Of a stretch of 64,000 bases of DNA, positions 1-53,380 are shown piece after piece. Position 1 is the stretch's first letter. Every line of letters begins with the position of its first letter. Made by a program: the position numbers and the translations under genes. The stretch is from the IMG/VR virus record IMGVR_UViG_3300042895_001344, positions 62,001-126,000 of that record; one strand, 5' to 3'. The notes beneath the pieces are model-generated. The model saw nothing but the letters and a program-made list of their open reading frames with translations, ran no database searches and was not told the origin of the DNA.

Positions 1-510
1 TAGATCCTGATGTACCTGCTGTTCCTGAAGATCCTGAAGATCCTGAAGTACCACTAGATCCGTTAGAACCTGAAGAACCACTTGTTCCTGCTGTTCCTGA
101 TGAACCACTAGATCCTGATGTTCCTGATGAACCACTAGATCCTGATGTTCCTGTTGATCCTGAAGAACCATCACTACCACTAGATCCTGATGTACCTGCT
201 GTTCCTGAAGATCCTGAAGATCCTGAAGTACCACTAGATCCGTTAGACCCACTAGAACCTGATGAACCATCACTACCACTTGTTCCTGATGTACCTGCAG
301 TTCCTGAAGATCCTGAAGATCCTGAAGTTCCTGATGAACCGTTAGACCCACTAGAACCTGATGAACCTGAAGTTCCCGCAGTTCCTGAAGAACCACTAGA
401 TCCTGATGTACCCGCAGATCCTGATGAACCTGAAGAACCACTAGATCCTGAAGTACCAGCTGTTCCTGATGAACCACTAGATCCTGATGAACCTGAAGTT
501 CCTGAACTAT
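1..510 (-). repeat. 9-nt-period degenerate repeat encoding (GSS/GTS/GSD/GSN)n
   Basis: Recurring gatcctgaa/gaaccacta/gttcctgat units. Confidence 0.9.
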
Positions 511-982: not shown

Positions 983-1003
983 CTACTTTGTGTTTGTTTA
1001 GTT

Positions 1004-1011
1004 TATAAATA
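1004..1011 (-). promoter_or_regulatory. TATTTATA candidate late promoter
   Basis: 21 nt upstream of ATG 982; the motif recurs before many structural genes. Confidence 0.55.
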
Positions 1012-1080
1012 CTTAATTTTTACCAATCTTCGAGTTATTTCTATCTATTTGTAATATATTTTTATTATTAATTTGTTTTT

Positions 1081-6309: not shown

Positions 6310-6311
6310 TT

Positions 6312-31821: not shown

Positions 31822-33936
31822 TTAGAAATCTAATTTAATTGCGAAAACTTGAGTTCCTGTTCTTTTAATTGGTGTAGATGTTTTAGCAATCACTAACGGT
31901 TCTTTTAATGAATCTAATAATGCGACTTCGGTAATATATGTGGGAGTTGTTCCGGTTGTTGGATATGTTGGGTTTTGTGATGTTAAGAATTGAGTAGATG
32001 GTAAGTTTATTAACATATTCATTTCTTCAATATCGGTTGCTCTTACTAATCTAATACTGCCAGGGAACGGTTGTTCGTCACCAAATTGTGGTTGTGTTGT
32101 TGATCCCGTTGTATTCCACAAATAATCAGTTGTTACATCTGACATATGGTCTTCTAAATCAAAAGACGTTCCACCAGTGTAATCACTTTTTGTAATTGTA
32201 AACGTATAGTTAACCAAATTTGTTGGATCAATATATCCACTAGTATATCCTGATATCTTTGATGTTATATCAATTTTTATCCATTTGGAAGTAGTTGGTG
32301 TTGTTCCTGTTTGTACTAAGGCGTAAAATTTATTAGCAATAAATCCGTCTTTAATACCGCTTGGGGTAGTGTACATATTTGGAAATGCTCCTGTATTAAA
32401 TTTAAATGTTAATTGTGAAGGGGTTCCGTTCCCTGTTATTTTATTAAAATAATTGCATGGTAATGCATTTAATGTAGATCCACTAGTACTTGTATCTCCA
32501 AACATATATGTAAACCAAACAGTATCTCCTGTGGTTGGTAGTAAGGAATTAATTGCCGTTCCGTCACTTGGTACCGATCCCAATTTAGGTGATGGTAATG
32601 TATATCGTCTATTAGATCTATAATCTAACATCGCCACCAACTCTTGATCGTCGAATACAACTATTTTGTTATTAATAAAAACTTTACCTACTTTATTAGT
32701 TTGTTCGTCTAACAAATATCTAAATTTTAATTCAAATCTAGACCCTGTTGTTCCTGAAAATGGTTTAATGTAATAATCAACAGTGTCCATTGTAAATAAC
32801 GCACCTAATGTTATTCCTGTATTTCTATGATAATTAATAAATGGTATGTAAATTTCAAAATAGTCACTATCAGTTTTATTATAGTCTCTATCATCTGTAT
32901 CTAAATCACCAAATAATGTAATACTTTCACCTGTAGTTCCCGTTAATGAACTTATATAATCATCATATTTAAAAAATCTTTCAGGATCATTTGTAACATC
33001 TCCAAGTTCAGAATAATGTATAATTGCAATACACCTTTGTTCTGACGGTAAAACTTCAACTAATTCATCGAATGAATTTTTAAATGTAGTTCCTGTTATA
33101 GTTGTTCCTACAAAATTTGTAAATGTTTGTCCTGATTTTGTATATCCTAATAATTGTTTTGTTGAAACATATTGATTACTATTATAACCACTTAAACTTT
33201 CATCTAAATCATTTGTTGGGTAATCTGCCCCGATTGGTTTGTCCGACCATACTGTATTTAATCTCCATGAATTAAGTTGTTGTGTATAATCAATTGGGTT
33301 AAATATGTCAGTTGTTGGTGATTCGTCGAAATATTCATTTAATACTACTTGTACATTACCTGTTAGTCCTGTTAAATTAGGGAGTTTACGATCTAGTGTT
33401 AATGTATTATCTGTTTTTGATACTACCTTATAGATCATACTATTTGTTTGTCCCGTAATTGTTGTACTTGAAAAACCATCTAAAACTACTGTTATAAAAT
33501 CATTTGGTTTAAAATTCGTACCATCCACCACAACCAGACTTGTTGTTCCACTTAGTTTACTATATGTTAATGGTTGTGGTGTTGTTTTTACTGTTGGTGC
33601 GGTTGAATACATAGATACAAATCCAGCACTACCCATTTCATTTCTTAAAGTTGTAGTTGAACTATTACTAATTGGTGTTCCGTATGTTGTTGAAGTTAGG
33701 GTATCACTACCTAAAGAATACGGATATTTAACACCTGATTCATTATCAAATGGAGCAAAAACTTTTTGTTGTCCTGTTGTTCCTGTTAAACCACTAAAAA
33801 TTGTATCGTAATCAAATTCAGAATCTCCTATTTGAAAGAATTCAATATTGAAAGTACCTTTGGCAATAGCCTTTCTACCCTCGTTTGTTATTCGGGCCGT
33901 TAAATATTCCGCGTGATTACTGTTTAAAAAACTCAT
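31822..33936 (-). CDS. Virion tail/baseplate structural protein
   Basis: ITNEGRKAIA...FQIGD N-terminus and ITEVALLD...IAK...PIKR C-terminus typical of tail-collar/baseplate proteins; TATTTATA at 33941-33948. Confidence 0.7.
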   Translation of the reverse strand: MSFLNSNHAEYLTARITNEGRKAIAKGTFNIEFFQIGDSEFDYDTIFSGLTGTTGQQKVFAPFDNESGVKYPYSLGSDTLTSTTYGTPISNSSTTTLRNEMGSAGFVSMYSTAPTVKTTPQPLTYSKLSGTTSLVVVDGTNFKPNDFITVVLDGFSSTTITGQTNSMIYKVVSKTDNTLTLDRKLPNLTGLTGNVQVVLNEYFDESPTTDIFNPIDYTQQLNSWRLNTVWSDKPIGADYPTNDLDESLSGYNSNQYVSTKQLLGYTKSGQTFTNFVGTTITGTTFKNSFDELVEVLPSEQRCIAIIHYSELGDVTNDPERFFKYDDYISSLTGTTGESITLFGDLDTDDRDYNKTDSDYFEIYIPFINYHRNTGITLGALFTMDTVDYYIKPFSGTTGSRFELKFRYLLDEQTNKVGKVFINNKIVVFDDQELVAMLDYRSNRRYTLPSPKLGSVPSDGTAINSLLPTTGDTVWFTYMFGDTSTSGSTLNALPCNYFNKITGNGTPSQLTFKFNTGAFPNMYTTPSGIKDGFIANKFYALVQTGTTPTTSKWIKIDITSKISGYTSGYIDPTNLVNYTFTITKSDYTGGTSFDLEDHMSDVTTDYLWNTTGSTTQPQFGDEQPFPGSIRLVRATDIEEMNMLINLPSTQFLTSQNPTYPTTGTTPTYITEVALLDSLKEPLVIAKTSTPIKRTGTQVFAIKLDF

Positions 33937-33961
33937 ATGTTATAAATATCTTTATTTTATT

Positions 33962-35281
33962 TTAATCACAAGGACAAGTTACGTTTGTAAATGATGAGAA
34001 GTATATTGCTGATGGATAGTTTGTTGCCATATAAGCACTATCTTTATTCGTGTCTATTCTTGAACAACATTCACTATTTATCGTCACAAAACTTAAATTA
34101 CCCGCACTATAATCTACATAATATATTGCTGTTAAATCACATCTCTCATACACATCATATGTTTGCGGTGTAGGAGTTGGTGGTAAAGGGGTTGAAGTTG
34201 GTGGTGCTCCTGAACAAGCTGTACAAGCTGTTTGTGCTGTTCCTGTTTGTGCCGAACCATCTCTCATAAATTCTCTTTCATCCGTACCATCAGAAACCCA
34301 AAACGTGTCATTAACTATCATATCACCATATACGTTACCATACATTGTGGAAGATAAACCTTTTACTTTTGTTAAATTACATAAAGACGTACCTACAACC
34401 GTAATATTAACATTACTATATTCACCACCAGTACATGCTGTTGGTCCGTTAACTAAACTAACATAACCACTAAACGTAGTTTCAAATGGAGTTGGTTGTG
34501 GTGTTGCAGTTGCCGGTAAAGGAGTTGGTGTTGTAGGACAACTACAAGATGTTGCACTATAATTTATAAATGAAATAGTTGCACCAACTTGGGATAATGA
34601 ACCATATTGCAAACAATCGTTTATTACTTGTGGTCCAATACCAAATGTTAAATAAATTGTCTCACCGCAACAATCAATATATCTAATATCACCAGCACTA
34701 TCAACTTCAAATCCTACAGATATTACACACTCAGGTGTTGGGGTTGGGGTTACAGTTGCCGGTAATGGGGTTACAGTTGCCGGTAATGGGGTTACAGTTG
34801 CTGGTAATGGGGTTACAGTTGCTGGTAATGGGGTTACAGTTGCTGGTAATGGGGTTACTGTTGCCGGTAATGGTGTTACTGTTGGTGTATTTGTGGGAGT
34901 TGCCGTTGGTACAACTGTTGGTGTGGGAGTTGGTGTGGGAGTTGGTGTAGTCGGCATTCTTATTGTTAAATTATTATAATCAACACATTCAACACATATA
35001 ACAGGGTCACCATCTTTTCCATTAAATTCTGATGGTACCACTCTAATTGTTTTTATTCCCTCCGGAACAACTACATATGTACCATTTAAACTTGATCTTG
35101 GAATATTGGAATATCCAACTAAAGGAAAATATTTTGACGAGTCAGATCCTGAAAGGGATCCTGTACATAAAGATCCTGAATTATTAGTACAATCATCTAA
35201 ACTACCTGTACAAGCATATAAATCAACATTTAATATTGATACACCTAAAGTAAATCCTGTTAATCGTATTGTATATGACAT
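33962..35281 (-). CDS. Cys-rich modular surface protein with Pro/Thr linkers
   Basis: Cys-rich modules separated by TPTP/PLPATVT repeats; TATTTATA at 35287-35294. Confidence 0.75.
   Translation of the reverse strand: MSYTIRLTGFTLGVSILNVDLYACTGSLDDCTNNSGSLCTGSLSGSDSSKYFPLVGYSNIPRSSLNGTYVVVPEGIKTIRVVPSEFNGKDGDPVICVECVDYNNLTIRMPTTPTPTPTPTPTVVPTATPTNTPTVTPLPATVTPLPATVTPLPATVTPLPATVTPLPATVTPLPATVTPTPTPECVISVGFEVDSAGDIRYIDCCGETIYLTFGIGPQVINDCLQYGSLSQVGATISFINYSATSCSCPTTPTPLPATATPQPTPFETTFSGYVSLVNGPTACTGGEYSNVNITVVGTSLCNLTKVKGLSSTMYGNVYGDMIVNDTFWVSDGTDEREFMRDGSAQTGTAQTACTACSGAPPTSTPLPPTPTPQTYDVYERCDLTAIYYVDYSAGNLSFVTINSECCSRIDTNKDSAYMATNYPSAIYFSSFTNVTCPCD
34746..34875 (-). repeat. 21-nt tandem repeat encoding (PLPATVT) x6
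   Basis: ggggttacagttgc(c/t)ggtaat units. Confidence 0.9.
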
Positions 35282-35314
35282 ATTTCTATAAATAGTATTA
35301 TATACAATTTAAAC

Positions 35315-35342
35315 AAAAAACCCCTTAAAATAAAGGGGTTTT
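35315..35342 (-). terminator. Intrinsic terminator
   Basis: AAAAAACCCCTT-AAAATA-AAGGGGTTTT. Confidence 0.75.
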
Positions 35343-35364
35343 AATATTGTTTTGTTTTTAAATT

Positions 35365-35922
35365 TTATGTTGAGCAAACATTAATGTTCGTTACAAATCC
35401 ACTTGCTGAAATTTGTCCTGTATATGTTGCAAATCCACCGGTTCTATAATAAGCGTGATATTCATCCTCTCCACCATAACCACTTGTTAAACCAGCATCA
35501 GTAAAGAATTGTTCTACATTGGCTGCATTATTTGTTGCTGCAAATACTTCAGTTAAGGGACTTTGAGGTTCTCCACCACTACCAGTAATAGCAGCACAAG
35601 CCTGTCCAATATTCGATTGTGTAACTGATGTTCCTAATTGATATGAATATGATGTTACTACAGGTGTTGGACTCGGAGTAGGTGTTGGGGTTGCGGTTTC
35701 CGGCGGCCACGGGATTGTATTAGTACAAGTACCTGTACTTGCAATTGTTCCCCCTGTTATAGCATCATTAATACCGGTAATTGTATGACCTGTTGTTAAT
35801 TGGGCTTTTGTAATACCAGAGGCTAATTCTGATACAACGTTAGCATTTGTTGTTCCTGAAATATTAAACGGACCCGCCGAAGTTCCTGACGATCCCGATG
35901 TTAATGTAAATGTTACTGTCAT
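35365..35922 (-). CDS. Small two-domain virion protein with PT linker
   Basis: Thr/Gly-rich N-domain, TPTP linker, Cys-bounded C-module; TATTTATA at 35939-35946. Confidence 0.7.
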   Translation of the reverse strand: MTVTFTLTSGSSGTSAGPFNISGTTNANVVSELASGITKAQLTTGHTITGINDAITGGTIASTGTCTNTIPWPPETATPTPTPSPTPVVTSYSYQLGTSVTQSNIGQACAAITGSGGEPQSPLTEVFAATNNAANVEQFFTDAGLTSGYGGEDEYHAYYRTGGFATYTGQISASGFVTNINVCST

Positions 35923-35969
35923 ATTATTTGTTTCTTTTTATAAATATCTGTTTATTTTGTTTTATTTTA

Positions 35970-38900
35970 TTAAGGTGCTTCTGCACAGAATGATTTATTG
36001 GATACTATTCCGGTATACGAAATGTTTCCTGAATATGGTGTGGCTCCTACACTATTTAAAGAAAACGCATGTGTTTCGTTCTCACCAGTATAAGTAGTTA
36101 CTAAATTAGGATCTAAAAAGAATTGTTCTACATTAAATGGTTGATCTGCTGTTGCATATACTGTAGTGTAGAAATCCATACCGAAATTATCACAAGCCAT
36201 ACTCGATGATGTATAAGATGGTCCTAATTGATAAGCATATGATGTTGCAGGTGGTGGTGTATTAGTTGGTGTTGGTGTTGCCTCCTCCGGTACAGGTGTT
36301 GCTGTTGCTGGTAATGGTGTTGCGGGTATTGGTGTTGCTGTTGCTGGTAATGGTGTCGCCGTTGCCGGTACAGGTGTTGCCGTTGCAGGTAATGGCGTTG
36401 GTGTTGGACAACTTACACAACCCTCTTGTGGATAAGCTCTATTTGTTGATCCCGATTTTTGATAATATCTTGATTGTCCGAATCCTTCACTTAACCAAAA
36501 ATACCCGTTTGGATCGATTTCTGCTTGAATAATACCACCTTCTATATAACTATTTGCGTCACACATTGTTCCATAAAATCCATTAAATTGGTATGCAAAA
36601 TATGGTGTAAAACTTCCACCATTACATGCATCATAACCACTATCTAAACTAATATAAGCGGTAAACGATGTTGCAGGTATTGGTGTTGCTGTTGCTGGTA
36701 ATGGTGTCACAGTTGCTGGTAATGGTGTCACAGTTGCTGGTAATGGTGTCACAGTTGCTGGTAATGGTGTTGGTGTATTAGTTGCAGGTTGAGCACATAA
36801 TGAACTACAACTTGTAACACCTAATGCAAACATAGTTGTTAATAAAGCAATCTGTGGAGTTGTTGAATTAACGACCTGAAATATATAACCTGTTTCAGGG
36901 TCTAATCTAAACCTTGCGTTTAACACTAATTCTATATCATTAGCAATAACAATAGTTTCAACATATTCACAACTACCATTTTGTAAACATTGATATCTAT
37001 CCGCCTCATAATAGAAATTAGGGTCAGGTGTTGGTGTTACTGTTGGTACATTAGTTGGTATATTGGTTGGTATATTGGTTGGTATATTGGTTGGTACGTT
37101 AGTTGGTATATTGGTTGGTTCTGGTGTATTAGTTGGAACCGCCGTTGGTATTGCCGTTGGTACGTTAGTTGGTACATTAGTTGGTATATTGGTTGGTATA
37201 TTGGTTGGTACTGCTGTTGGTACGTTAGTTGGTAATGGTGTTGGTGTGCTGTAGATAACATCAACATCAACATTAAAGTTACAATCTGGCGTTGGAGTTG
37301 GAGTTGGTGTTGTAGTGTTAGTAGGTGTTGGGGTTGGTGTATTTGTTGCTGGTAATGGTGTAGGGGTTGGTGTATTTGTTGCGGATTCCGGTAATGGTGT
37401 TGGAGTATTTGTATTTGTTGGTGTAGGAGTTGGTGTACTATAGATAACATCAACATCAACATTAAAATTACAATCTGGTGTTGGAGTTGCGGTATTTGTT
37501 GGTGTTGGAGTTGCGGTATTTGTTGGTGTTGGAGTTGGGGTACTATAGATAACATCAACATCAACATTAAAATTACAATCTGGTGTTGGTGTAGGTGTTG
37601 CAGTGTTAGTAGGTGTAGGAGTTGGTGTACTATATACGACTAAGACATCAACATTAAAGTTACAATCTGGTGTTGGGGTTGGTGTTGCAGTGGATGTTGG
37701 GGTTGGTGTTGGGGTACTATAAAATATTTCTACGTCAACAGCAAACTCACAATTTGGTGTGGCTGTTGGGGTTGGTGTTGGAGTTGGAGTGCTAGTAACA
37801 ACTAAAACATCGACTAAGAAATTACAATTTGGTGTTGGGGTTGGAGTAGGTGTTGGGGTGCTAGTAACAACTAAAACATCGACTAAGAAATTACAATTTG
37901 GTGTTGGGGTTGGAGTAGGTGTATTTGTTGCAGGTGATGCAGTTACTGTTGGTGTTGGGGTGGAAGGTAATGGTGTTGCAGTTGCAGGTAATGGTGTTGG
38001 TGTTGGTGAAGGAGTTGTGGTAGGTGTTGCGGTTGGTGTTGGTGTGTTTGTTGGAGTTGGTGTTGGTCCTGGCTCATATATCGCTAATCCTCCACTAAAT
38101 CTACAATCTTTTACATCATTTTGACCAATTGACACATATCCATAATCTAAATAATTTTTTACTGTACAATCATTTGGGCCATATTTGTAAGACGTAAATT
38201 TAATTTTTTCACGTCCTTCATTATCTATGAAAATTTCATATGATAGTATTTTTTGTTTTGTTGTTCCCGTAATTGATGAATTACCAATTTCAGTTCCATA
38301 TTGTGTATTTTTACCTTCTCCATCTATAGTTGATCCAGAATAGGTGTTAATATATGTAATTGTATTTTGTATCGCCCTTTTCCACAATATTTTTAATTGT
38401 GTGTCGTATGATAAATCATTATAATCTACAAGATCATTAGTGGTACCTCCACTATATAAATTAATACTAACACCATCCGTTGTTATAGTATTGTCATTAT
38501 TAATTATTGTTGTTCCAGTTAATGAGGTGGCACCACTTATTAAAACATATGTACATCCCGTTACATTTGTATTCCAAGTATCTGTCTTCCAAGTACCTGT
38601 AGTTTCATAAAGACGAGTATATATTGTACCTGATGTTGGATTACTTGTATTATTGTTTGAACTTTTTAATACTCTAAAATTAATACTTTCTGAATCGTAA
38701 ATAGTATGGGTTGAACCAGATGATATAATTTCATCAAACGAATCTTTATTTAATGCAGATATATTACCTGGATCTGTCATACCAGAATAAACTTTACCGT
38801 CAATTTCAAATACCGGATAAAGTTTAACATAACCGTCAAATTTCGTTTCTCCAGATTCATCATTTTCAATACTAAATCCAAGCTCATTGTCCGCCTGTTT

Positions 38901-41333
38901 TATTAAATAACCAAAATAACTTGTATATCCTGTTGGTATTTCTAAATCAAAATTAATATGGTCTTCCGTTTCTGTAGGTTGGCATCCATATCTATATTGA
39001 TATTTTGATCTACCAAAAATATTATTTGAAATTAAATTACCTCCAGTCCATAAAGTTGTTGCAGGAATAATTTGATCAATAACACTTGTCCAATAAGGAC
39101 TCATTTTTTCAATAAACAAATTAACATCGGGAAAACTATATGGTGTGAAATCTGTATGTGATATGTAATCTTGATAGATGTCCTCTAATGTAATATAATT
39201 CTTCTTATATTTTATTAAATTAGAATTTTTAATTTGTTGATGTATCATTAAATCAACATACTCAGCAAATGTTACTCCTGTTTGTGGTGTTAAACTATTT
39301 GTACCGAATGTTGTACCTGTTGTACCAAAGTCTCTTGATTTACGATATATGTCATAATCAACCGCTTGTGCTGACGATAAATAAACTTCAATATTTTTTC
39401 TATTTAATAATAAACCAGAATTATCATTAAGATTTTCTGTTTGATTGTTATCGATAATATTTTTTAATTTATATCCTGAGTCTAATCCTGGCAATTTTCT
39501 ATAAACGTCAAAATAATCTTCACCATATGTGTATGCACTATTTTTAGTAACAATATTTTTAGTTCTTCCTGTTACCGTTGAATTATCGATATCAATCACT
39601 AATGGTGATTTATGATCTGTAGTATTATCATACCAACCAGATCCTTTTTGGAAAAAATATTCTGTTGATCCCGTAATTCCTTTAGGTAATAACGTATCTC
39701 CATTAACGGGATAATTTTCAGAATTAAATGTTGTTGTACCTGTAGTTATACCAGTATAATATCTATATGGAAGATATGTTACACCATTAATAGTTCCACC
39801 TGTTGGTAAGAATATTCCTGTTTTGTAAATTTTAGTTCCCGATATAACATCATAAATGTCACCTTTTAAATCAAATGATTTAGGTAAAGATATTACCTTG
39901 TAAACGTATTGATTAATTTTAATCATTGGTTCGGGTGCACCTAAAAATCTTAAAAAGAATTCTAAAGATTGTCTTGTACCTTTTGATTTATAAATGTAAG
40001 CCAAGTTAACTAACAACCTTCTATAAAATTCATATTCGGCATCTATTAAAGACGTTCCCGATACTAATCCAGAATATTGTTGTGATGTCTTAGTGTATAA
40101 TAATTCATCTAAACCTTTCTCATCAATTAAGTTAATTGTATCTAATCCTAAAGTATTCGCTAAATTCTTTAACAATACATCGGGTACGTTATTAATACCG
40201 TCATAACTTACATTTCTCATGTAAGCAATATTATCAATATATTTTTTTACACTATCAAAACTTTGTCCATATAATTGAAATAATGATTCGGCCTTTTTAT
40301 CGGGACTATCAAATTCAAACAATTGAGGTGATGTTAAAAACCTAACAAATAAGTTAGATTTATAATCATCAATTTCATCTGCTATGTTACTTAAATTTGT
40401 TAAATAACTATCATATTCTAAACCTGTAATTTTAATGTTCCAATCTTCCTTATCGGATAACGGCCAACTATAATTTACTGAAATTAATTCGGTTTTTGTT
40501 TCATCAAAACTATCTCTTGGAACTTTGAAACTTGAGGTGTACTTTGGAAAACTATCTCTATTTAATAAACTTTCCTCTAAATCATCTAAACCTTTAAAGA
40601 ACTCTTCAATAACACCATCATTTGGTTTAATTAATATATTTTCAGAAAACCCCGTTAAGTTACCAAATGGTTTACCACTTACCTTTAATGAAATTATATT
40701 ATCACTATTAGGTTCAATATATGAAATTACATCATAGGTTTTTCCACTTATTGAAATTAAATAATTTTTAAAAGAAGTGTAAAAATCTCTGTTTTTATTA
40801 ATTGAAGGTAATATGGTATTACTTTTCGGTGTGACCATAACAATCGAAAATGGATTGTATAGTTTACTATATTCAACTTGAAACTGAGTGGTATTACTTA
40901 TATTATCGTATGTAATATTATTAGCGGTAAAATTCGTTACTTTAATTAAACTATTAGAATCAATCAAAATAGCCGCCGGAAAATTATTAATTATATTAGT
41001 TGTCGCAACACCTAGTCTACTTTTTAATGATCCAAATAAAGATTTAGCGGCATCATTTTTAGAACCTTTAAATTTTATTTCTTTATTTTTACTTGCGGTA
41101 CCACTCGTAGTTGTACTTGAAGTTTGTCCTTTTAAATCATCTAATGTTAAAAAATTAGAAAACGGATTTGTTTTAAAATTCTTTGTATCTCTTTGTATTA
41201 CCTCACTATCTAACGCAAAGTTCGTATTAGTCAACTGACCGGTACCCGTGGTAATTTGATTACCAACTAGGTTGTCACTGAATGTATCGGCACCACTTGC
41301 AGCTTGACTTGGAATTTTACGTAATTTTGCCAT
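35970..41333 (-). CDS. 1787-aa baseplate/tail protein with mucin-like C-terminal region
   Basis: [25 protein letters not shown] resembles baseplate wedge/tail protein I motifs; C-terminal ~700 aa of PT repeats and Cys modules. Confidence 0.75.
36240..38070 (-). repeat. Pro/Thr-rich coding repeats including seven CxFxVDVxVxxS units, PTNI/V units and PLPATVT units
   Basis: Identical ~63-nt copies at 37791 and 37860; 12-nt units at 37040-37232. Confidence 0.9.
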
Positions 41334-42244
41334 TAGATATTAGTGATTGTATCAAAGTTTAAAGTTTCATCAATATCATTACGGTTTTCTCTAACCTCAT
41401 ATAGAGTTTCGTTAAAGTCGTCTTTAATTTCAAATAAGTTATATTGTTTATAGATGTTATTATCTTTATCGTAAATTGTGTAAATACCTGGAGTAACCGC
41501 CTTAGTTTGATTACCGTAAAGGGCATTTGCAAGTGTTGACGCATCATGTTCAACCATATCAATTTCGATAGTTGTTGGGTTCATATATGTATTTGATAAA
41601 ATAACCATTTGACCTGGACTACCGATAAATGGAACCGTGTTTGGTTTATTCGATGGTGCTGACGATGGTGTAATTGTTAAAAACATAAAGTTTGTTGCAC
41701 CTTCACTATATTGATATCTTACCGACTTTTGTGTTGAACTATTTAGATTCGCAGTAACAGGTGTACAATAAAAAGAAGATGTAACAATTTTATAGAAATT
41801 TGGTGTTTTTTGTTTGTTATTAGAATTTATATATTCAATCCTATATCCCACTAAACCTTGTGGTGTAAATTTATTTCTATCTTCAGACTTAACATTTGAT
41901 AAATCCAAGATTAGTCCTCTTACTGATGGTAATGATGCTAAAACACCACAATCCATAATTGTTGTTCTAATTTGTTTTGGTCTGATATGAAGTGTGTATA
42001 TTCCTAAATCGGGAAAATCTACCGCATTTAATTTAAGGTTATATAAACCTCCTAAAATTTCCACACCGCTTTCTCCACCGGTATTTCCGTTGTGTAAAAT
42101 TGGTGTTAAAACCTGATTTGGTGTTAACTTTTTTAAGGTTGTTATTGACGTCGAGATTCTATTTGGTGCATAATGATATAGAATTTCTACATCATCAGGT
42201 GATATATCCGCCGGTCTAACTATTCCATATGATCCTACTGCCAT
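41333..42244 (-). CDS. Putative virion structural protein
   Basis: 303 aa within the structural block; TATTTATA at 42255-42262. Confidence 0.65.
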
Positions 42245-42268
42245 ATTCTTTTATTATAAATATAAATC

Positions 42269-43696
42269 TTATTGTTTTTTAACTTTAAAAAATCCATTTC
42301 CATAAACATCTAACTCACTCATGTTGTCAATTTCACCCAATCTTAGGTTAACCTCCATGACACCTTGACGTCCTCTTTCCACAAAAATGTCAGAATATAC
42401 TGTTGGGTCATCTATAAAACCTAAAAAATGTTCGTTTCTTGTTAACATATGATTTATTACGTATTCTGTGTCATATTGAGTTGTGTTTCCGATTGTTGTA
42501 AGGTATGGAACGGTGTTTATTGTATTTCCCGTTATTTCATATGTGTAACCACTAGTTGGTCCAAATCTATAGTTTGGAACACTACCCGTGATCATTGTAT
42601 ATCCATCTGCTAAGTCCATATAATATAAACTTCCGCTGTCATTAGGTAAAGTGTAACCAGAGTATAGTGAACCTGAAAATAAACCTGTTGTGTAAGATGA
42701 TGTACTCACGGTACTTTCACCATATTTTCGTAATTCACCTATTCTACTAATACCTATTGCCATAAATTTAAATGGCTTGGTGGGTGTTGCAGTATATCCT
42801 GTGTTAGAATAATCATAATCATTTAAATAATTTTGATAGTTACTTCCTGTGTAATAAATGTTACCAGGTAGGGTAAAACCGGTGGAGGTTCCTAATACAT
42901 TATCTATTGTAACACCTGTTGATATTGTTATATTTTTTATTATTTTTTCTTTATTCCAAGGAGAATCTAATGATAATGTTAATGTATAACTACCCGTTGT
43001 ATTTCCCGTTACCGTTGGATATGTGTGTCCCGAATTTGGGAAATTAGAATATAATACTCCACTATTAACAGTTAACCCTGATGTATATCCATCTCCCCAA
43101 TCAATTGTAAATTCTTGATCAACAATTTTTCTTAATTTATTTGGGTTTACCGTATTATAAACCGTAACAACTGAACCTGATTGTTTATAAGTAAAATTTA
43201 TTAATTGTTCGACCTGTTCAATATTACCATCAAAGGATGACATTACACCCATTTCATCCGCACTTGCTTCAAGTGCAATTGGTACTACATATTCATAACC
43301 CGTAAATCCCGTATATAAATTCCAATTATCTCCATCCCATTTATAATATTTCCCCTTTGTATTATTAATTGCAGTTTGTTCAACTTCTTTCCAATATACA
43401 CTACCAGATGGTATGTTATTTAAATTACTACCTGTTAATGATTGATACGTTTTACCACTATAAAATAAAACAACGCTTCCTGTGTATGTAATATCGGGAT
43501 ACCATTTTATGTCACGTACCAAATGTAAACTACCTGTCTCATTTGAAGATGGTACCATACCATCTATTGGGACTGATGCGCTATACCAAGATTTCCAATC
43601 ATTTATTTCTGTATCAAACCAAAAAGTACCAGTTTCTGAATGTAAATTAACATCAGGTATTTGTCTTTTTAATATGGTATATTCGTTCTTTTTCAT
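42269..43696 (-). CDS. Virion protein with CBM5/12-like and PKD-like domains
   Basis: WYPDITY...FYSGKTYQSL...PSGSVYW; TIDWGDG...HTY...GSYTLTL. Confidence 0.65.
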   Translation of the reverse strand: MKKNEYTILKRQIPDVNLHSETGTFWFDTEINDWKSWYSASVPIDGMVPSSNETGSLHLVRDIKWYPDITYTGSVVLFYSGKTYQSLTGSNLNNIPSGSVYWKEVEQTAINNTKGKYYKWDGDNWNLYTGFTGYEYVVPIALEASADEMGVMSSFDGNIEQVEQLINFTYKQSGSVVTVYNTVNPNKLRKIVDQEFTIDWGDGYTSGLTVNSGVLYSNFPNSGHTYPTVTGNTTGSYTLTLSLDSPWNKEKIIKNITISTGVTIDNVLGTSTGFTLPGNIYYTGSNYQNYLNDYDYSNTGYTATPTKPFKFMAIGISRIGELRKYGESTVSTSSYTTGLFSGSLYSGYTLPNDSGSLYYMDLADGYTMITGSVPNYRFGPTSGYTYEITGNTINTVPYLTTIGNTTQYDTEYVINHMLTRNEHFLGFIDDPTVYSDIFVERGRQGVMEVNLRLGEIDNMSELDVYGNGFFKVKKQ

Positions 43697-43700
43697 TTTA

Positions 43701-45506
43701 TTATATTACATCAAATGTTATACTTGCATATTTTCCATTATCATATGAACTTGTTATTGTGAAATTATAAACTCCTTCACCCAATGTTACATATTGTGTA
43801 CTGTCAGGTGCTGTTAAAGCTGGCGATGTGGCATTTAAAAATATATCACCAGCAACAAAACCACTATTCGAACCACCACTTGTTGTTCCACCAAAAACAT
43901 TTAAAGTAACTTTTACACTATAACTAGCATATACTGTTAACGTTCCTACCGCATAACCATTATTAGAATATCCTGCATTTGTTGATCCTGTCACACTATA
44001 TGGTAAAGGAGTTGGTGTATTTGTTGGTGGTAAAGGAGTTGGTGTTGCGGTTATTGGTCCTGCTGTTGGGGTTTCTGTTGGTGGTAAAGGAGTTGGTGTA
44101 TTTGTTGGTGGTAAAGGAGTTGGGGTTGGGGTTGGTGCACATGATATTTCACCATAAAACACGGATGAAATTGATGCAATTACTCCTGATAATGAATTAT
44201 TTTGAATACAATCATTAATTACTTGTGGTCCAATACCAAATGTCTCGATAACTTCGGTACCCTCACAATTAAAATATCTAACAGTTCCACCAAAATCAAC
44301 ATCAAAACTTACTGACGTTACACAAGGACTTTCTGTAGGTGTTGGGGTTATTGTAGGAATTACTGTGGCCACAGGTGTAGGTGTTGAAGTTGGGAAAGGT
44401 GTTGACGTTGGTCTAGGTGTCGCCGTAACTCCACCGATAGGTGTTGGAGTTGGGGTTGATACTGGTAATAATACTCCACCTCCTTTTTCGTAGAATGTTA
44501 TACTATCAGTCGTTGTATAACCTGTGCCTATTCTACCTAACTTTGTTGTTCCCGTATATCTATATATTTGATACGTTCTTTCATAATGATCAAAATCAAT
44601 TTGATAATACATATCTTTTTCTTCTGTTATATTATAACTTGTTGTTTGACCTGAATTTATAAAATCTAATATCTCACCTCTATCCGCATTGAAAAATTTT
44701 GCCGTCATGAAAAATGTATTCATTCCATGATAAAAATTTCTATTATAGGTTATTTGATTTGGTATTGTAAATGTTTGACCTGTCCAACCAATTAACGTTG
44801 TTCCTGTTGTTGGTATATTAACTTGTGTTATTTCATTATTTTCATTTGTAAATAATATAGTTTGTATTGTAGTTCCAGTTCCAAAAACATATTGATCTAA
44901 TGTTGTTGTTCCGCTTAAATTTGTGTCGGTTAAAACACTCTCATTATCAAACCAAAACAAATACATGTTTTCTTTGTTTCGATAATTTGAACCCGTAAAA
45001 ACAGGTACATATATGTTATACCCATAGTTACTACCTGTATGAAAATATTTTTCACCTAAGGGTAATGCTAAATTTTTAGAATTTATTAATCTTCTATTTT
45101 GTCTTGTCGGTGGCTCACATGTTAAAACATAATTTGTTATACTACCAGGTGTTTTATAAAACTCTAACCTAAAAAAACTTTCAATTGACTGTTTTGTCAT
45201 CAACTGATTTTCTTGTGTTGATATACCTACAGGATTATAATCTAAAACATAATTTGGTGTATCTCCACTTGAAAAATAAAATTGAAACCATATATCTGTT
45301 TGTGACATTGTAATACCACTGGTTGTTTTATCATATGGTTTATGAATGTATCTAACTGTTTCATAATTTTTAGATGGATTAATAATATCTTTTAAAATCT
45401 CATCTTCAAAATCGGCAAGATTATCCTGCCAACCTAAATCTGTTCTAAAATTTTGTTCACTATTAACTACAATATTTAAATTGTTACTATTTTTTAAAAT
45501 TTCCAT
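43701..45506 (-). CDS. Virion structural protein with PT linkers and a Cys module
   Basis: Shares the FGIGPQVINDC module with 33962-35281. Confidence 0.7.
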   Translation of the reverse strand: MEILKNSNNLNIVVNSEQNFRTDLGWQDNLADFEDEILKDIINPSKNYETVRYIHKPYDKTTSGITMSQTDIWFQFYFSSGDTPNYVLDYNPVGISTQENQLMTKQSIESFFRLEFYKTPGSITNYVLTCEPPTRQNRRLINSKNLALPLGEKYFHTGSNYGYNIYVPVFTGSNYRNKENMYLFWFDNESVLTDTNLSGTTTLDQYVFGTGTTIQTILFTNENNEITQVNIPTTGTTLIGWTGQTFTIPNQITYNRNFYHGMNTFFMTAKFFNADRGEILDFINSGQTTSYNITEEKDMYYQIDFDHYERTYQIYRYTGTTKLGRIGTGYTTTDSITFYEKGGGVLLPVSTPTPTPIGGVTATPRPTSTPFPTSTPTPVATVIPTITPTPTESPCVTSVSFDVDFGGTVRYFNCEGTEVIETFGIGPQVINDCIQNNSLSGVIASISSVFYGEISCAPTPTPTPLPPTNTPTPLPPTETPTAGPITATPTPLPPTNTPTPLPYSVTGSTNAGYSNNGYAVGTLTVYASYSVKVTLNVFGGTTSGGSNSGFVAGDIFLNATSPALTAPDSTQYVTLGEGVYNFTITSSYDNGKYASITFDVI

Positions 45507-47380
45507 TAACAGTTAGTTTTATTTTTATAATTATTAAAACTATTAAATTCATCAGATTTATTTGTGTATGATTTTTCATTTCTTAAATAGAAATTAATAT
45601 CACTTACAACATAGTGTGTATTATTCATATATGGAAATCTTGTTCCATTACCATCTTGATCCACAAATCCATGATCATATAAATCTCTCCATTTCCATAA
45701 TTTATCATCATTATCATAAATTGCATTTTCAGGTAAATTGATTAAATCATTTGTTTTTGAATTTTCAATATATGGTGATAACTCTCTTAGTTTAACTCTG
45801 TAGTGAGGTTGGTAATAATACCCAACAGTATTTCCTGTTGTTGCTCCCAAATAAAAACTATCTTGATCTTGTCTGTGATAAAATAATCTATTACTTTCAC
45901 CTACTGTTGTTCCAGAAAAAATTGTTTTGTGTGAAAATTTATGAAACGCCTCACTAATAATTCTTTCTTTTAATTCTTTTCTATTGTATTCAACGAAAGC
46001 ACCTGTAAGACCTGTGGTTCCTACCGGTATAGTTGTTCCACCAGTAAATGTTACACCCGTATAATTGTAGGTACTACCTAATATTGTATTTGTTTTACCA
46101 CTGAACGTTTGTGTTAATCCTGTCATTGCCTTTTCAACCGATGTTGTTCCACTAAATTGATTATCCAACCAATTATCATGAAAATTAAATTTAAATCCTA
46201 CTTTTGGTGGATAATCAAATAATCCGTTACCGTTTTTTAAAATTATACTTATATAAACTTCTGTTGGTGTGTAACCCAAATTATTAGTTATTCCCGTTAA
46301 TGAGAATGTTTCTTTAAAATCAAATAATACAGATTCTTGTCGATTTCTTTCTACTAATATATCATTTTCTTGTAGTGGATTTTCAAATAATATTTTTCTT
46401 TCATCTTCAAAAATTGATGATTCAAAACCAACTTTATCCATAATATATTGTTGGTCTCCTGTTAATGTTTTATGTTTATGAACATAATATTGTGACGTTG
46501 TTCCTGAAATATTTTTAATGTCTAAACATCTTTTACCTAAAACAAATGTTACTCCACTCAAAGTGTGTTCCGTTGTAAATTCACTTTTAAATAAATTAAC
46601 AACATAATTTTCGGAATTGTAAATTTCATTACCAACACTATCAATATAAAAAATTTTACTATTAACTGATAATCCACTTAACATCGTTGATCCGGATAAT
46701 ATGATATACTCCCCTTGTGACATTCCGTGTTCAATAGGTGATGTTAATGTATAATAATTTCCATTATCTTCAACTCTAAATGGTATTCCATCTTTCGCCT
46801 CAAAAGAATATGTCATATTTCCATTGGTGTCTCCAGATAGTGTATACTTTATTGGGAATGTTGAATCTTGTCCGTTCACATAACTTAAATATAAATTCCA
46901 ATTTTTATAAGGAGCGTCGATTGATGTTGTGATGGTATGACCGGTGTATCTTCCAAATGGTGTTCCGTCAAATAAATCAATTTTTGGTATTACATTTGTT
47001 GTTCCTAATGTGGATCCAGATGAAGGGGTTGTCCTTTCTCGTAAAACATCATTTCTTAAAAACGCAAATTCGTTATATGGTACAAATCCTAAATCATTTC
47101 CTGTTCCGTCACCACATAAATAAAAGTTTCTTAATAATGGAATATAATCAGTAAAACCATTATACATGTTTCTAAAAACCATTTTTAATTTACCATATAT
47201 TTTATAGTTAAAACTTTGGTTTCTTTCGTCATCAAATAATTCGGTTAGATTTAACATTATATTTCTATCACCTTCTCTCATCAATGTCTCATCATTATCT
47301 AATTTAACATTAAGATTAAGATCCTGTTCATCGGCCTTAAAATATCTTTTACTCGGTAATAAAATTTCTTTCTTTTTCAT
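45506..47380 (-). CDS. Putative tail/baseplate structural protein
   Basis: 624 aa, coupled to 43701-45506; rich in [ST]GxT. Confidence 0.65.
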   Translation of the reverse strand: MKKKEILLPSKRYFKADEQDLNLNVKLDNDETLMREGDRNIMLNLTELFDDERNQSFNYKIYGKLKMVFRNMYNGFTDYIPLLRNFYLCGDGTGNDLGFVPYNEFAFLRNDVLRERTTPSSGSTLGTTNVIPKIDLFDGTPFGRYTGHTITTSIDAPYKNWNLYLSYVNGQDSTFPIKYTLSGDTNGNMTYSFEAKDGIPFRVEDNGNYYTLTSPIEHGMSQGEYIILSGSTMLSGLSVNSKIFYIDSVGNEIYNSENYVVNLFKSEFTTEHTLSGVTFVLGKRCLDIKNISGTTSQYYVHKHKTLTGDQQYIMDKVGFESSIFEDERKILFENPLQENDILVERNRQESVLFDFKETFSLTGITNNLGYTPTEVYISIILKNGNGLFDYPPKVGFKFNFHDNWLDNQFSGTTSVEKAMTGLTQTFSGKTNTILGSTYNYTGVTFTGGTTIPVGTTGLTGAFVEYNRKELKERIISEAFHKFSHKTIFSGTTVGESNRLFYHRQDQDSFYLGATTGNTVGYYYQPHYRVKLRELSPYIENSKTNDLINLPENAIYDNDDKLWKWRDLYDHGFVDQDGNGTRFPYMNNTHYVVSDINFYLRNEKSYTNKSDEFNSFNNYKNKTNC

Positions 47381-47393
47381 TTTTTAGTTTTTA

Positions 47394-52897: not shown

Positions 52898-53350
52898 TTA
52901 TATGTTTAAAATTATAAAGTCGGAAGTTGAAAATGACCCGTTATTAACTGTATATTCTATTTTAACTACCGCCGTATATGGTTTTGTCGATTCATCAGAA
53001 ACCCTAAATAATCTTTCATCTTCATCTTGTGCGATACTTCTTTGTCGATTTGGATCGTCTTCCGCTGATGTTATAGATATATTTGTAATATCTAAGTTTG
53101 GTATGAATTTTTTAACTCCTTCTCTGATTTCTTCTTCAATTAAATTATATGTAATTGCGTCATTTTGATCGAAAATGTATTGATATATTCTTGTTCCAAA
53201 ATCAGGTAAGTAATATCTACTACCTTTTCTTGTTAAAATAAGGTGTATAAGATTGGCTCTAATCTCCTTTTCAGGGATTTCAGTCATATTAAGATAATCT
53301 CCTTTGGGGCTATCTCTAAATGGATAATCAATACCGTACGTTACTGCCAT
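52898..53350 (-). CDS. Baseplate wedge subunit (gp25/GPW-like)
   Basis: IRANLIHLILTRKGSRYYLPDFGTRI; start MAVTY at 53350. Confidence 0.88.
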   Translation of the reverse strand: MAVTYGIDYPFRDSPKGDYLNMTEIPEKEIRANLIHLILTRKGSRYYLPDFGTRIYQYIFDQNDAITYNLIEEEIREGVKKFIPNLDITNISITSAEDDPNRQRSIAQDEDERLFRVSDESTKPYTAVVKIEYTVNNGSFSTSDFIILNI

Positions 53351-53380
53351 ATTCAATAAATATAGATAAACCTAAAATGG

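What the first reader, a model, noticed from the sequence alone, without database searches (positions are those of the whole stretch)
31822..47380. Dispersed [S/T]-G-x-T motif (~80 copies) confined to certain virion proteins: candidate phage glycosylation/modification sequon
Seen (manual counts of [ST]GxT): 17 in 31822-33936 (704 aa), ~19 in 35970-41333, 11 in 42269-43696, 10 in 43701-45506, 15 in 45506-47380, and 4 in the first 70 aa of 35365-35922. In contrast there are 0 in NrdJ (753 aa), 0 in Rad50 (778 aa), 0 in the gp6 wedge (609 aa), and only the Walker A match in the helicase. The x position varies freely (T,L,Q,I,D,S,Y,G,H,K,V,N,F,R,M,C,A) and the flanks are unrelated, so this is not a duplicated domain. 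A rough composition estimate gives only 1-2 per 700 aa. A sister motif, [ST]-G-S, dominates the left-hand fibres and occurs ~10 times in 42269-43696. Known: Ser/Thr O-glycosylation of virions by phage glycosyltransferases occurs in some mycobacteriophages, and Ser-Gly is a glycan acceptor in proteoglycans. Inference: a lineage-specific acceptor code that decorates exposed tail parts (glycan shield or adhesion). The enzyme would be encoded outside this window.
Basis: partly seen in the sequence, partly recalled or inferred. Interest (0 to 1): 0.85.

Follow-up and report, generated by a model that had tools for sequence, protein, structure and literature searches.

The report
Dispersed Ser/Thr-Gly-x-Thr motif in phage tail proteins
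Six outer tail and baseplate proteins of an uncultured large freshwater phage carry about seven times more copies of the four-residue motif [Ser/Thr]-Gly-x-Thr than chance predicts, and relatives keep it up; it may be a tag for attaching sugars, but no chemistry has been shown.

Summary

- **The motif is one coupled unit.** [ST]G followed by a non-Thr, and GxT preceded by a non-Ser/Thr, both sit at expectation. Position 4 is Thr, not Ser. Codons vary, so selection acts on the protein.
- **It is not a repeat, a shared domain or a regular beta-helix.**
- **Relatives keep it.** Homologous proteins in 80 related viral contigs keep high counts, with some sites conserved and many turning over. A clade at about 28% identity shows enrichment in the same gene families and in non-homologous distal proteins. 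The gp6 wedge and a conserved 303-aa protein have none.
- **Controls are flat.** These are two cultured relatives and 1,011 other ORFs of this phage group.
- **The fold does not need it.** Distant homologues of one family mostly lack it.
- **Sites are in loops.** A confident AlphaFold model puts them in loops and at strand ends.
- **Candidate enzymes exist.** The same contig encodes two beta-1,4-galactosyltransferase-like enzymes fused to lectin-like domains, about 20 kb outside the window.

A modification sequon is the best reading (about 0.4) but is untested. A structural turn idiom is the main rival. The "sister motif" in the left fibres is ordinary collagen Gly-X-Y repeats.

The parts
45506..47380 (-). 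624-aa protein of unknown fold, strongest carrier: 15 motifs against 0.8 expected
   Evidence: Counts are. Sixty sequences of the family (the window protein and 59 homologues) average 12.7 motifs against 0.8 expected, spread over 48 distinct motif columns. The AlphaFold model has pLDDT 86 and puts 12 of 15 motif glycines in coil. There is no Pfam, PHROG, PDB or Foldseek match.
43701..45506 (-). 601-aa protein, 10 motifs against 1.8 expected, nine of them in residues 63-328
   Evidence: The C-terminal part holds Pro/Thr linkers and a module shared with 33962-35281 and 35970-41333.
42269..43696 (-). 475-aa protein, 11 [ST]GxT plus 10 [ST]GS-hydrophobic sites; about 45% of its glycines lie in these two patterns
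   Evidence: The family keeps 8.9 motifs against 1.0 expected in the close clade, and 347 against 45.6 in the distant clade.
38261..40748 (-). Motif-rich globular part (residues 196-1025, 18 of 19 motifs) of the 1787-aa protein 35970-41333
   Evidence: Homologues keep 15.3 motifs against 3.5 expected.
36248..38081 (-). Thr-Pro and ATPLPAT linkers with about 7 copies of a short Cys-Asn-Phe-x-Val-Asp-Val module in the same 1787-aa protein; the single [ST]GxT here lies in a globular stretch between linkers
   Evidence: This region explains the GC and GC-skew anomaly seen.
35365..35922 (-). 185-aa protein, 4 motifs in its first 60 residues
   Evidence: One homologue carries 19 motifs. The C-terminal half resembles the C terminus of the 1787-aa protein.
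31822..33936 (-). 704-aa distal, poorly conserved protein (probable receptor-binding end of the module), 17 motifs against 1.9 expected
   Evidence: Only one homologue was found in the 80 related loci.
47394..51011 (-). 1205-aa protein in the position of T4 gp7; 3 motifs, all in the last 160 residues
   Evidence: The family has 215 motifs against 98.6 expected in the distant clade.
41333..42244 (-). Conserved 303-aa protein inside the module with no motif (internal negative control)
   Evidence: It is 55-61% identical between clades whose neighbouring genes are about 30% identical. There is no PDB or Pfam match.
33962..35281 (-). 439-aa Thr-rich (16%) protein with only 1 motif (internal negative control for composition)
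51067..52896 (-). gp6-like baseplate wedge, 0 motifs; marks the start of the baseplate module
   Evidence: PHROG 219 and 6. The family has 0 motifs against 25.5 expected in the distant clade.
52898..53356 (-). gp25-like baseplate wedge, 0 motifs
   Evidence: Pfam GPW_gp25, E 7e-11; count.
1081..8012 (-). Two collagen-like fibre proteins; source of the [ST]GS 'sister motif'; not enriched for [ST]GxT
   Evidence: Pfam Collagen; counts.

Best explanation
The motif hydrophobic-[Ser/Thr]-Gly-x-Thr is a recognition unit, a sequon, written into loops of the outer baseplate and tail-fibre proteins of this phage group. A factor acting in trans reads it. That factor is most likely a phage-encoded cytoplasmic glycosyltransferase system that O-glycosylates one of the two hydroxyl residues before or during tail assembly. 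The result would be a glycan coat on the exposed tail parts, serving for protection or adhesion.

Shown here: the enrichment, the three-position coupling, selection at the protein level, conservation together with turnover across relatives, restriction to the same gene families across clades, loop location, and the presence of glycan-building enzymes in the same genome.

Inferred, not shown: that any residue is modified, which residue it is, which enzyme acts, and what the glycan does.
For: 1. The unit is cooperative. Counts are 76 against 10.5 expected, while [ST]G followed by a non-Thr (67 against 61), GxT preceded by a non-Ser/Thr (29 against 35) and [ST]GxS (7 against 5.8) sit at expectation.
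2. Position 1 swaps freely between Ser and Thr, using both Ser codon families. Position 4 stays Thr, for example 58 of 59 at site 182.
3. The fold does not need it. Distant homologues of the 624-aa family carry 0-5 copies. At the same alignment columns they have ordinary Asn/Asp/Gly/Ser turn residues or gaps.
4. Density is kept up by turnover: 48 distinct motif columns in 60 sequences, about 10 conserved and about 22 rare.
5. The same gene families are enriched in a clade only about 28% identical, and so are its non-homologous distal proteins (428 against 146.5). gp6 (0 against 25.5) and the 303-aa family (6 against 9.8) are not.
6. There is no generic preference for the motif: 525 against 509 in 1,011 other ORFs of this phage group, and no enrichment in two cultured relatives.
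7. Twelve of 15 motif glycines are in coil, in varied loop contexts.
8. Pro is excluded at x, as in known sequons.
9. The same 217-kb contig encodes a glycan toolkit. It has two GT7 enzymes (E 2e-41 to beta4GalT1 and beta4GalT7, with intact HDxDM, FNRG and WGxEDDD signatures) with a lectin-like LamG domain. It also has a weak GT2 hit, a methyltransferase, radical-SAM-like proteins and a transketolase-like protein.
10. These enzymes are also found on the 335-kb and 211-kb relatives that carry motif-rich proteins.
Against: - There is no chemical evidence of modification.
- GT7 enzymes are known to extend sugars, not to prime proteins. The only candidate priming enzyme is a sub-threshold GT2 hit (E 9e-4).
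- The enzyme cluster lies about 52 kb from the motif genes, beside collagen-like, Pro/Thr-rich and LamG fibre genes. Those are equally plausible substrates and none of them carries the motif.
- The strong hydrophobic preference just before and after the motif, and the polar small residues at x, are what a strand-turn-strand element would show.
- The [ST]GS-hydrophobic variant in the 475-aa protein also looks structural.
- Non-target proteins show no avoidance of the motif.
- Co-occurrence of enzyme and motif is documented on only 3 contigs. Two other contigs above 300 kb could not be scored because hit lists are capped.
Confidence: 0.4

Rival explanations
1. A purely structural idiom. Hydrophobic-[ST]-G-x-T-hydrophobic would be a self-contained tight turn or loop cap: Gly in a left-handed conformation, the Ser/Thr side chain capping the backbone, and Thr starting the next strand. 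This phage group would use it again and again when building new loops in fast-evolving beta-rich tail proteins. Nothing is attached to it.
For: - Flanks are hydrophobic or aromatic at -1 and +1. Charged residues and Gly are depleted at -1. x is polar and small, and Pro is excluded.
- Several sites sit exactly at strand ends or starts, for example 229, 420, 427 and 441.
- Equivalent columns in distant homologues hold classic turn residues.
- The [ST]GS-hydrophobic variant in the 475-aa protein has the same strand-turn-strand look.
- From general knowledge, not tested here: Gly at the first turn position with a polar second residue, and Thr after the turn, fit published preferences for type II-prime hairpins.
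Against: - Physics is universal, yet the motif is at chance in 1,011 other ORFs of the same phages, including beta-sandwich LamG proteins. It is also at chance in the tail modules of two cultured relatives and low in most distant homologues of the same fold.
- Only 1-2 of 15 sites are tight two-residue hairpins. The others lie in loops of 5-30 residues with no common context.
- Partial motifs are not enriched at all.
- Val or Ile never replaces Thr at position 4, although they are better strand formers.
Confidence: 0.3
2. A ligand-contact motif. Many weak, hydroxyl-rich loops on the outer tail would bind a host surface polymer, or an anion such as phosphate, so the enrichment reflects multivalent adhesion rather than modification.
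For: - The motif is confined to the distal, fast-evolving tail proteins, including non-homologous ones in another clade.
- Aromatic residues are frequent next to the motif.
- Some homologues of the 624-aa family carry an added carbohydrate-binding module, PF02839.
Against: No known binding motif of this form was found. The motif is also present in proteins adjoining the baseplate core, such as the 624-aa protein next to the gp7-like gene. Nothing here tests binding.
Confidence: 0.12
3. A sequon for a different modification of Ser or Thr (phosphorylation, nucleotidylation, acylation and the like), made by a phage or host enzyme that was not identified.
For: The genetic signature is the same as for the main explanation. 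It does not depend on the GT7 enzymes being the right ones.
Against: No kinase or transferase of this kind was seen among the window ORFs or in about 35 kb to its left. More than half of the genome was not examined.
Confidence: 0.08
4. An artefact of composition, low-complexity repeats, shared domains or a DNA-level signal.
For: The proteins are Thr-rich (10-20%) and some contain Thr-Pro repeats.
Against: - Shuffles that preserve composition give z values of 6-16 per protein.
- A 16%-Thr neighbour has only 1 motif.
- Repeats and shared segments lie outside the motif-rich parts.
- Codons vary widely at each position.
Confidence: 0.01

Closest known systems
O-glycosylation of mycobacteriophage virions by phage-encoded glycosyltransferases (known from the literature; the term is cited in papers listed)
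   Same: Phage-encoded enzymes modify Ser/Thr of exposed virion proteins in the cytoplasm. The proposed role is shielding.
   Different: From my own knowledge, the acceptors there are Ser/Thr-rich C-terminal extensions of capsid and tail-tube proteins of siphoviruses, not a dispersed four-residue unit. Here the carriers are baseplate and fibre proteins of a T4-like large phage, the enzymes are GT7-like, and no modification has been shown.
Cytoplasmic N-glycosylation of adhesins at many dispersed Asn-x-Ser/Thr sequons (the HMW1C/NGT type), and the Asn-x-Ser/Thr sequon in general
   Same: A short sequon with a free middle position that excludes Pro, a hydroxyl residue at a fixed offset with Thr preferred, and many sites scattered over a large surface protein.
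   Different: The acceptor there is Asn and the enzyme is GT41. Here both fixed polar positions are Ser/Thr, a Gly is required, and no GT41 was seen.
General O-glycosylation motif of Bacteroidota, Asp-[Ser/Thr]-[Ala/Ile/Leu/Val/Met/Thr]
   Same: A three-position O-glycosylation motif found in many proteins of one lineage. The nearest cultured relative by gp6 infects Flavobacterium.
   Different: It is a different motif. It acts in the periplasm on exported proteins, which phage tail proteins are not.
Evolving glycan shields of animal-virus envelope proteins
   Same: Sequon density is kept up while individual sites are gained and lost in variable surface regions.
   Different: Those use host N-glycosylation of membrane proteins. 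The similarity is in the evolutionary pattern only.
Beta-1,4-galactosyltransferases of family GT7 (beta4GalT1, beta4GalT7)
   Same: The two phage enzymes match at E 2e-41 and keep the family's signature motifs. Beta4GalT7 works on the glycan attached to Ser-Gly sites of proteoglycans.
   Different: The phage enzymes have a LamG lectin-like domain inserted in the catalytic domain. They have no match in PHROGs. Known GT7 enzymes act on sugar acceptors, not on protein.
Glycine-containing tight beta-turns (types I-prime and II-prime) and Ser/Thr side-chain turns
   Same: Gly after a polar residue at a strand end, polar small residues next, and Pro excluded.
   Different: These are universal, whereas the motif here is specific to one lineage and to certain proteins, and it occurs mostly outside tight hairpins.

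Membership tests
Protein modification sequon (O-glycosylation acceptor) | A short fixed pattern around a hydroxyl residue, enriched beyond composition | tested here: met
   76 against 10.5, z about 20; partial patterns at expectation.
Protein modification sequon (O-glycosylation acceptor) | Sites on solvent-exposed loops | tested here: inconclusive
   12 of 15 motif glycines are in coil in a model with pLDDT 86, and many sites fall in insertions relative to distant homologues. No coordinates were available, so accessibility was not computed.
Protein modification sequon (O-glycosylation acceptor) | A matching enzyme encoded by the phage or host and co-occurring with the motif | tested here: inconclusive
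   Two GT7-LamG enzymes and accessory genes lie on the same contig and on two relatives. They are not adjacent to the motif genes, and absence elsewhere could not be scored because hit lists are capped.
Protein modification sequon (O-glycosylation acceptor) | A covalent mass addition on motif residues | not testable with these tools
   This needs mass spectrometry. No cultured member of the clade was found (no match among 50,697 phage records).
Regular beta-helix or solenoid, or a tandem-repeat domain | Periodic spacing and related flanks | tested here: not met
   Spacings run from 3 to 605 residues with no period. No internal or mutual similarity exists in the motif-rich parts. DNA tandem repeats occur only in the Pro/Thr linkers. 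The model is multi-domain beta, not a solenoid.
Collagen-like Gly-X-Y fibre | A match to the collagen triple-helix repeat | tested here: not met
   Met only by the left fibres 1081-6309 and 6312-8012. None of the motif proteins matches.
Two-residue beta-hairpin turn | Strands directly on both sides of the Gly-x pair | tested here: not met
   Clearly true only at site 427, and loosely at 441 and 515, out of 15 sites.
GT7 beta-1,4-galactosyltransferase (for the enzymes found outside the window) | A match to the GT7 catalytic domain, with an Asp-x-Asp metal site and the Trp-Gly-x-Glu-Asp-Asp loop | tested here: met
   Pfam 7N and 7C at E 1e-16 to 1e-20. PDB beta4GalT1 and beta4GalT7 at E 2e-41. 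H70, D71, D73, W134, G135, E137 and D138 are invariant in 27 sequences.
T4-type baseplate module (context of the motif genes) | gp25 and gp6 homologues followed by large peripheral proteins in conserved order | tested here: met
   gp25 Pfam hit, gp6 PHROG hit, and the same gene order in a clade at about 28% identity. The roles of the proteins after gp6 are inferred from position only.

The most novel reading that the evidence does not exclude
A large group of uncultured freshwater T4-like phages writes a dispersed four-residue O-glycosylation code, [Ser/Thr]-Gly-x-Thr, into the loops of its outer tail proteins. It reads that code with its own eukaryote-like galactosyltransferases fused to lectin domains, and so builds and continually reshuffles a glycan coat on the tail. 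This would be the first defined O-glycosylation sequon for phage particles and a phage counterpart of the glycan shields of animal viruses.
Probability: 0.3. Interest if true: 0.85.

Novelty: new variant of a known kind. Interest (0 to 1): 0.62.

Why it matters
If the motif is a sequon, glycosylated phage tails could be predicted from sequence alone. That would extend virion glycosylation from a few actinobacteriophages to abundant environmental T4-like phages. It would also supply a compact acceptor tag and enzyme set for protein engineering.

If the motif is instead a structural idiom, it is an unusually clean case of a lineage-specific loop-building rule. Even now it is a simple sequence marker for the exposed tail proteins of this phage group, none of which matches any known family.

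Tried and rejected
- **DNA-level signal:** rejected. Ten codons are used at position 1, including both Ser families, and several at positions 2 and 4.
- **Composition artefact:** rejected by shuffles and by a Thr-rich neighbour with only 1 motif.
- **Shared domain or repeat:** rejected.
- **Regular beta-helix:** rejected.
- **Avoidance of deamidation-prone Asn-Gly turns as the driver:** weak. Asn-Gly is 0.68 of expectation against 1.32 in distant homologues, but 17 copies remain and Asp-Gly is not depleted.
- **The 303-aa conserved gene inside the module as a hidden enzyme:** no Pfam or PDB profile match, so no support.
- **First AlphaFold run with 41 close homologues:** failed (pLDDT 43). A 90-sequence alignment that added distant homologues from the representative search gave pLDDT 86.
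- **Fold searches:** no significant PDB match, and BFVD returned only an uncharacterised homologue plus two marginal uncharacterised hits. Sequence searches of four of the proteins against the PDB found nothing useful.
- **Genome-wide co-occurrence of the enzyme and the motif:** not settled, because hit lists are capped at 80-120 rows, and the intermediate-clade query found one contig only.
- **Walking right from the window:** failed, because the end gene is not on record.
- **Literature searches:** found no description of this motif.

Full report
**Setting.** All genes of the window lie on the minus strand, and GC content is about 30%. The window is positions 62001-126000 of a 217,142-bp viral contig, IMGVR_UViG_3300042895_001344 (L002). 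Related contigs reach 335 kb.

The phage is T4-like in parts. It has a gp25 wedge, a gp6 wedge, gp32, a UvsX/RecA-like protein, a DnaB-like helicase and Rad50-like and NrdJ-like genes. The nearest cultured relatives by gp6 are only 25-28% identical: Flavobacterium phage immuto and Microcystis phage Mel-JY01. The strongest motif carrier has no match in 50,697 deposited phage genomes.

None of the nine genes that follow gp6 (31822-51011) matches Pfam or PHROGs. Their assignment as outer baseplate and tail-fibre proteins rests on position and on conserved gene order.

| ORF | Observed | Expected |
|---|---|---|
| 31822-33936 | 17 | 1.9 |
| 35365-35922 | 4 | 1.3 |
| 35970-41333 | 19 | 3.5 |
| 42269-43696 | 11 | 1.1 |
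| 43701-45506 | 10 | 1.8 |
| 45506-47380 | 15 | 0.8 |

- Per-protein z values run from 6 to 16 against 1,000 composition-preserving shuffles. The short 185-aa protein is the exception (z 2.5).
- Pooled, the count is 76 against 10.5 (z 19.8). Twenty-four percent of all glycines in these six proteins lie in the motif.
- Replication and repair proteins have about the number expected: roughly 5 against 3.6, including the helicase Walker A site.
- An unbiased scan of all tripeptides and gapped tetrapeptides puts T-G-x-T and S-G-x-T directly after the patterns caused by Thr-Pro linkers.

**Anatomy of the motif.** The three fixed positions are tightly coupled.

| Pattern | Observed | Expected |
|---|---|---|
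| [ST]G followed by a non-Thr | 67 | 61 |
| GxT preceded by a non-Ser/Thr | 29 | 35 |
| [ST]GxS | 7 | 5.8 |
| Ala, Asn or Asp in place of Ser/Thr at position 1 | no excess | - |
| Ala or Asn in place of Gly | no excess | - |

- The unit is therefore Ser-or-Thr, Gly, any residue, Thr.
- Codons vary at each fixed position and both Ser codon families are used, so selection acts on the protein and not on the DNA.
- The residue before the motif is usually Phe, Ile, Leu or Tyr and almost never charged or Gly. Pro, Glu, Lys, Met and Trp are depleted at x. The residue after the motif is often hydrophobic or Ser.
- Spacing between sites runs from 3 to 605 residues with no period.
- The proteins share only Pro/Thr linkers and C-terminal modules, none in the motif-rich parts. 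DNA tandem repeats are confined to those linkers.

**Relatives.** Eighty related loci were fetched with the 624-aa protein.

- *Counts stay high.* The 624-aa family averages 12.7 motifs against 0.8 expected (range 6-17). The 475-aa family averages 8.9 against 1.0, and the 1787-aa family 15.3 against 3.5. The gp6 and 303-aa families have essentially none.
- *Some sites are fixed.* Sites 182, 292 and 362 are kept in 50-56 of 59 sequences. Position 1 alternates between Ser and Thr while position 4 remains Thr.
- *Other sites come and go.* There are 48 distinct motif columns in 60 sequences: about 10 common, about 16 intermediate and about 22 rare.
- *Across all fetched loci,* 213 ORFs are individually significant, and nearly all belong to these same families.

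A second clade was fetched with a homologue about 33% identical in the alignment; its 624-family members average about 28% identity to the window protein by BLAST. It has the same gene order and the same split between families.

| Family (distant clade) | Observed | Expected |
|---|---|---|
| 475-aa | 347 | 45.6 |
| 624-aa | 155 | 26.5 |
| 1787-aa | 321 | 96.7 |
| gp7-like | 215 | 98.6 |
| ORFs with no homologue among the window query proteins (includes the distal proteins) | 428 | 146.5 |
| gp6 | 0 | 25.5 |
| 303-aa | 6 | 9.8 |

An intermediate contig shows intermediate values. The enrichment follows position in the tail module rather than ancestry of the individual protein.

**Controls.** The tail modules of Flavobacterium phage immuto (about 22 against 13, nothing significant) and Microcystis phage Mel-JY01 (7 against 5.4) are not enriched. 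In the same phage group, 1,011 ORFs around the glycosyltransferase genes give 525 against 509, with no significant ORF. These include collagen-like fibres, Pro/Thr-rich proteins and five LamG-domain proteins. General protein structure therefore does not favour the motif.

**Is it required by the fold?** A profile search of 1.8 billion representative proteins found 575 family members. Eighty-five near-full-length ones, mostly 21-43% identical, carry 0-5 motifs each, apart from a few longer proteins (163 against 33.8 in total). At the columns of the window's 15 sites, 0-2 of 67 distant members keep the motif. They show Asn/Asp/Gly/Ser turn residues or gaps instead. The fold does not need the motif, and the sites are loop positions, many of them in insertions.

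**Structure.** With 41 close homologues AlphaFold failed (pLDDT 43). With 90 sequences that included the distant ones it gave pLDDT 86 and pTM 0.85.

- The protein is a multi-domain beta structure. It has no significant match in the PDB, and in BFVD its only strong match is an uncharacterised homologue from an uncultured phage.
- Twelve of 15 motif glycines are in coil, about the same fraction as other glycines (28 of 35).
- Some sites end a strand with the Ser/Thr (229, 427), and some start a strand with the final Thr (420, 441) or precede one by a residue or two (275, 292). Others lie in loops 5-30 residues from any strand (146, 362, 410, 489).
- Only site 427 is a clean two-residue hairpin.

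**Enzymes.** No window ORF matches a glycosyltransferase. Walking left on a near-identical 213,871-bp contig showed two more collagen-like fibres, three Pro/Thr-rich proteins (up to 29% Thr and 23% Pro) and five LamG proteins. Then comes a cluster of:

- a methyltransferase (E 3.5e-12);
- a weak GT2 hit (E 9e-4, below Pfam's threshold);
- two paralogous GT7 enzymes of 471 and 477 aa;
- three radical-SAM-like proteins;
- a transketolase-like protein.

The GT7 profile matches beta4GalT1 and beta4GalT7 at E 2e-41. The family's FNRG, HDxDM, YFGG and WGxEDDD signatures are conserved, and a LamG lectin-like domain is inserted in the catalytic domain.

The first GT7 gene lies at about 40.0-41.5 kb of the window's own contig. 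That is about 20.5 kb left of the window and about 52 kb from the nearest motif gene. It is also on the 335-kb and 211-kb relatives that carry motif-rich proteins. The family has 488 loci in IMG/VR and no PHROG match. Whether every motif-rich genome has it could not be settled.

**Interpretation.** Composition, repeats, shared domains and DNA signals are excluded. Two readings remain serious.

*A sequon read by a trans-acting factor* explains these points:
- why a cooperative three-position unit is enriched only in certain proteins of certain phages;
- why density is kept while sites move;
- why non-homologous distal proteins share it;
- why the fold does without it elsewhere.

A glycan toolkit with lectin-fused transferases in the fibre gene cluster makes glycosylation the most likely chemistry.

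*A structural turn idiom* explains the hydrophobic flanks, the polar x, the exclusion of Pro and the strand-boundary sites. It is also supported by the [ST]GS-hydrophobic variant in the 475-aa protein. But it does not explain the lineage and protein specificity, or the chance-level frequency in more than a thousand other proteins of the same phages.

I rate the sequon reading at about 0.4 (about 0.3 for glycosylation by the phage's own enzymes), the structural idiom at about 0.3, a binding motif at about 0.12 and another modification at about 0.08. The link between the GT7 enzymes and the motif is inference only. GT7 enzymes normally extend glycans, and the collagen-like or Pro/Thr-rich fibres beside them are equally plausible substrates.

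**Novelty.** Virion glycosylation by phage enzymes is known in mycobacteriophages. A dispersed tetrapeptide acceptor code on the tail proteins of T4-like phages has not been described in anything I could find. If confirmed, it would be a new variant of a known kind. The motif proteins themselves, the GT7-LamG fusion and the whole clade are uncharacterised.

Noticed in passing
L085:11676-20634 and L087:10001-21383 (same contig as the window, about 20-30 kb left of window position 1): A cluster of a methyltransferase, a weak GT2 hit, two beta4GalT-like GT7 enzymes with an inserted LamG lectin-like domain, three radical-SAM-like proteins and a transketolase-like protein. It lies inside a fibre gene cluster. 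The GT7-LamG family has 488 loci in IMG/VR and no PHROG match.
   Followed up: partly
window 36248-38081 (residues about 1085-1695 of the 1787-aa protein); also 34739-34948 and 44001-44420: Long Thr-Pro, Pro-Thr-Asn and ATPLPAT linkers with about 7 copies of a short Cys-Asn-Phe-x-Val-Asp-Val module. They cause the local rise in GC and the reversed GC skew. Linkers of this type are classic O-glycosylation sites in other organisms.
   Followed up: partly
window 1-8012; L082:15328-24276; L084:13189-16716: At least four collagen-like fibre proteins (566-1742 aa, Gly-X-Y rich in Ser and Thr) and three Pro/Thr-rich proteins (up to 29% Thr, 23% Pro), followed by five small LamG-domain proteins. This is an unusually elaborate fibre set.
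   Followed up: partly
window 42269-43696: A second local pattern, hydrophobic-[ST]-G-S-hydrophobic-x-hydrophobic, occurs 10 times against 0.9 expected. Together with [ST]GxT it accounts for about 45% of the protein's glycines.
   Followed up: partly
window 51067-52896 and its homologues in L001-L080 and L244-L310: The gp6 wedge family has no [ST]GxT at all in 61 distant-clade copies (25.5 expected) and about none in 43 close-clade copies. This could be avoidance, but the sequences are related, so the statistics are soft.
   Followed up: partly
window 41333-42244: A 303-aa protein with no known family is 55-61% identical between clades whose neighbouring genes are only about 30% identical. It is the most conserved gene of the module after gp6.
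   Followed up: partly
proteins P0004 and P0073 (homologues of window 45506-47380): Some family members are about 100 residues longer and carry a carbohydrate-binding module (PF02839), which fits an exposed, glycan-contacting position.
   Followed up: no
window 8090-31782: The window also encodes glutaredoxin, thioredoxin, an AAA ATPase, a NusG-like protein, a Dam-type methyltransferase, an amidase, a sigma-70-like factor, ClpP, a Rad50-like ATPase with a metallophosphatase partner, and a primase-like protein.
   Followed up: no
motif position 1 codons in the six proteins: The Thr codon ACG is used in 12 of 43 Thr at position 1, against 9% of Thr codons overall in these proteins. This may be a codon-pair effect before GGA.
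   Followed up: no
window 35970-41333, residues 1359-1438: A weak hit (E 2e-6) to PDB chain 9ufe_CA, named OCM3, falls in the Pro/Thr linker region and is probably a low-complexity match.
   Followed up: no
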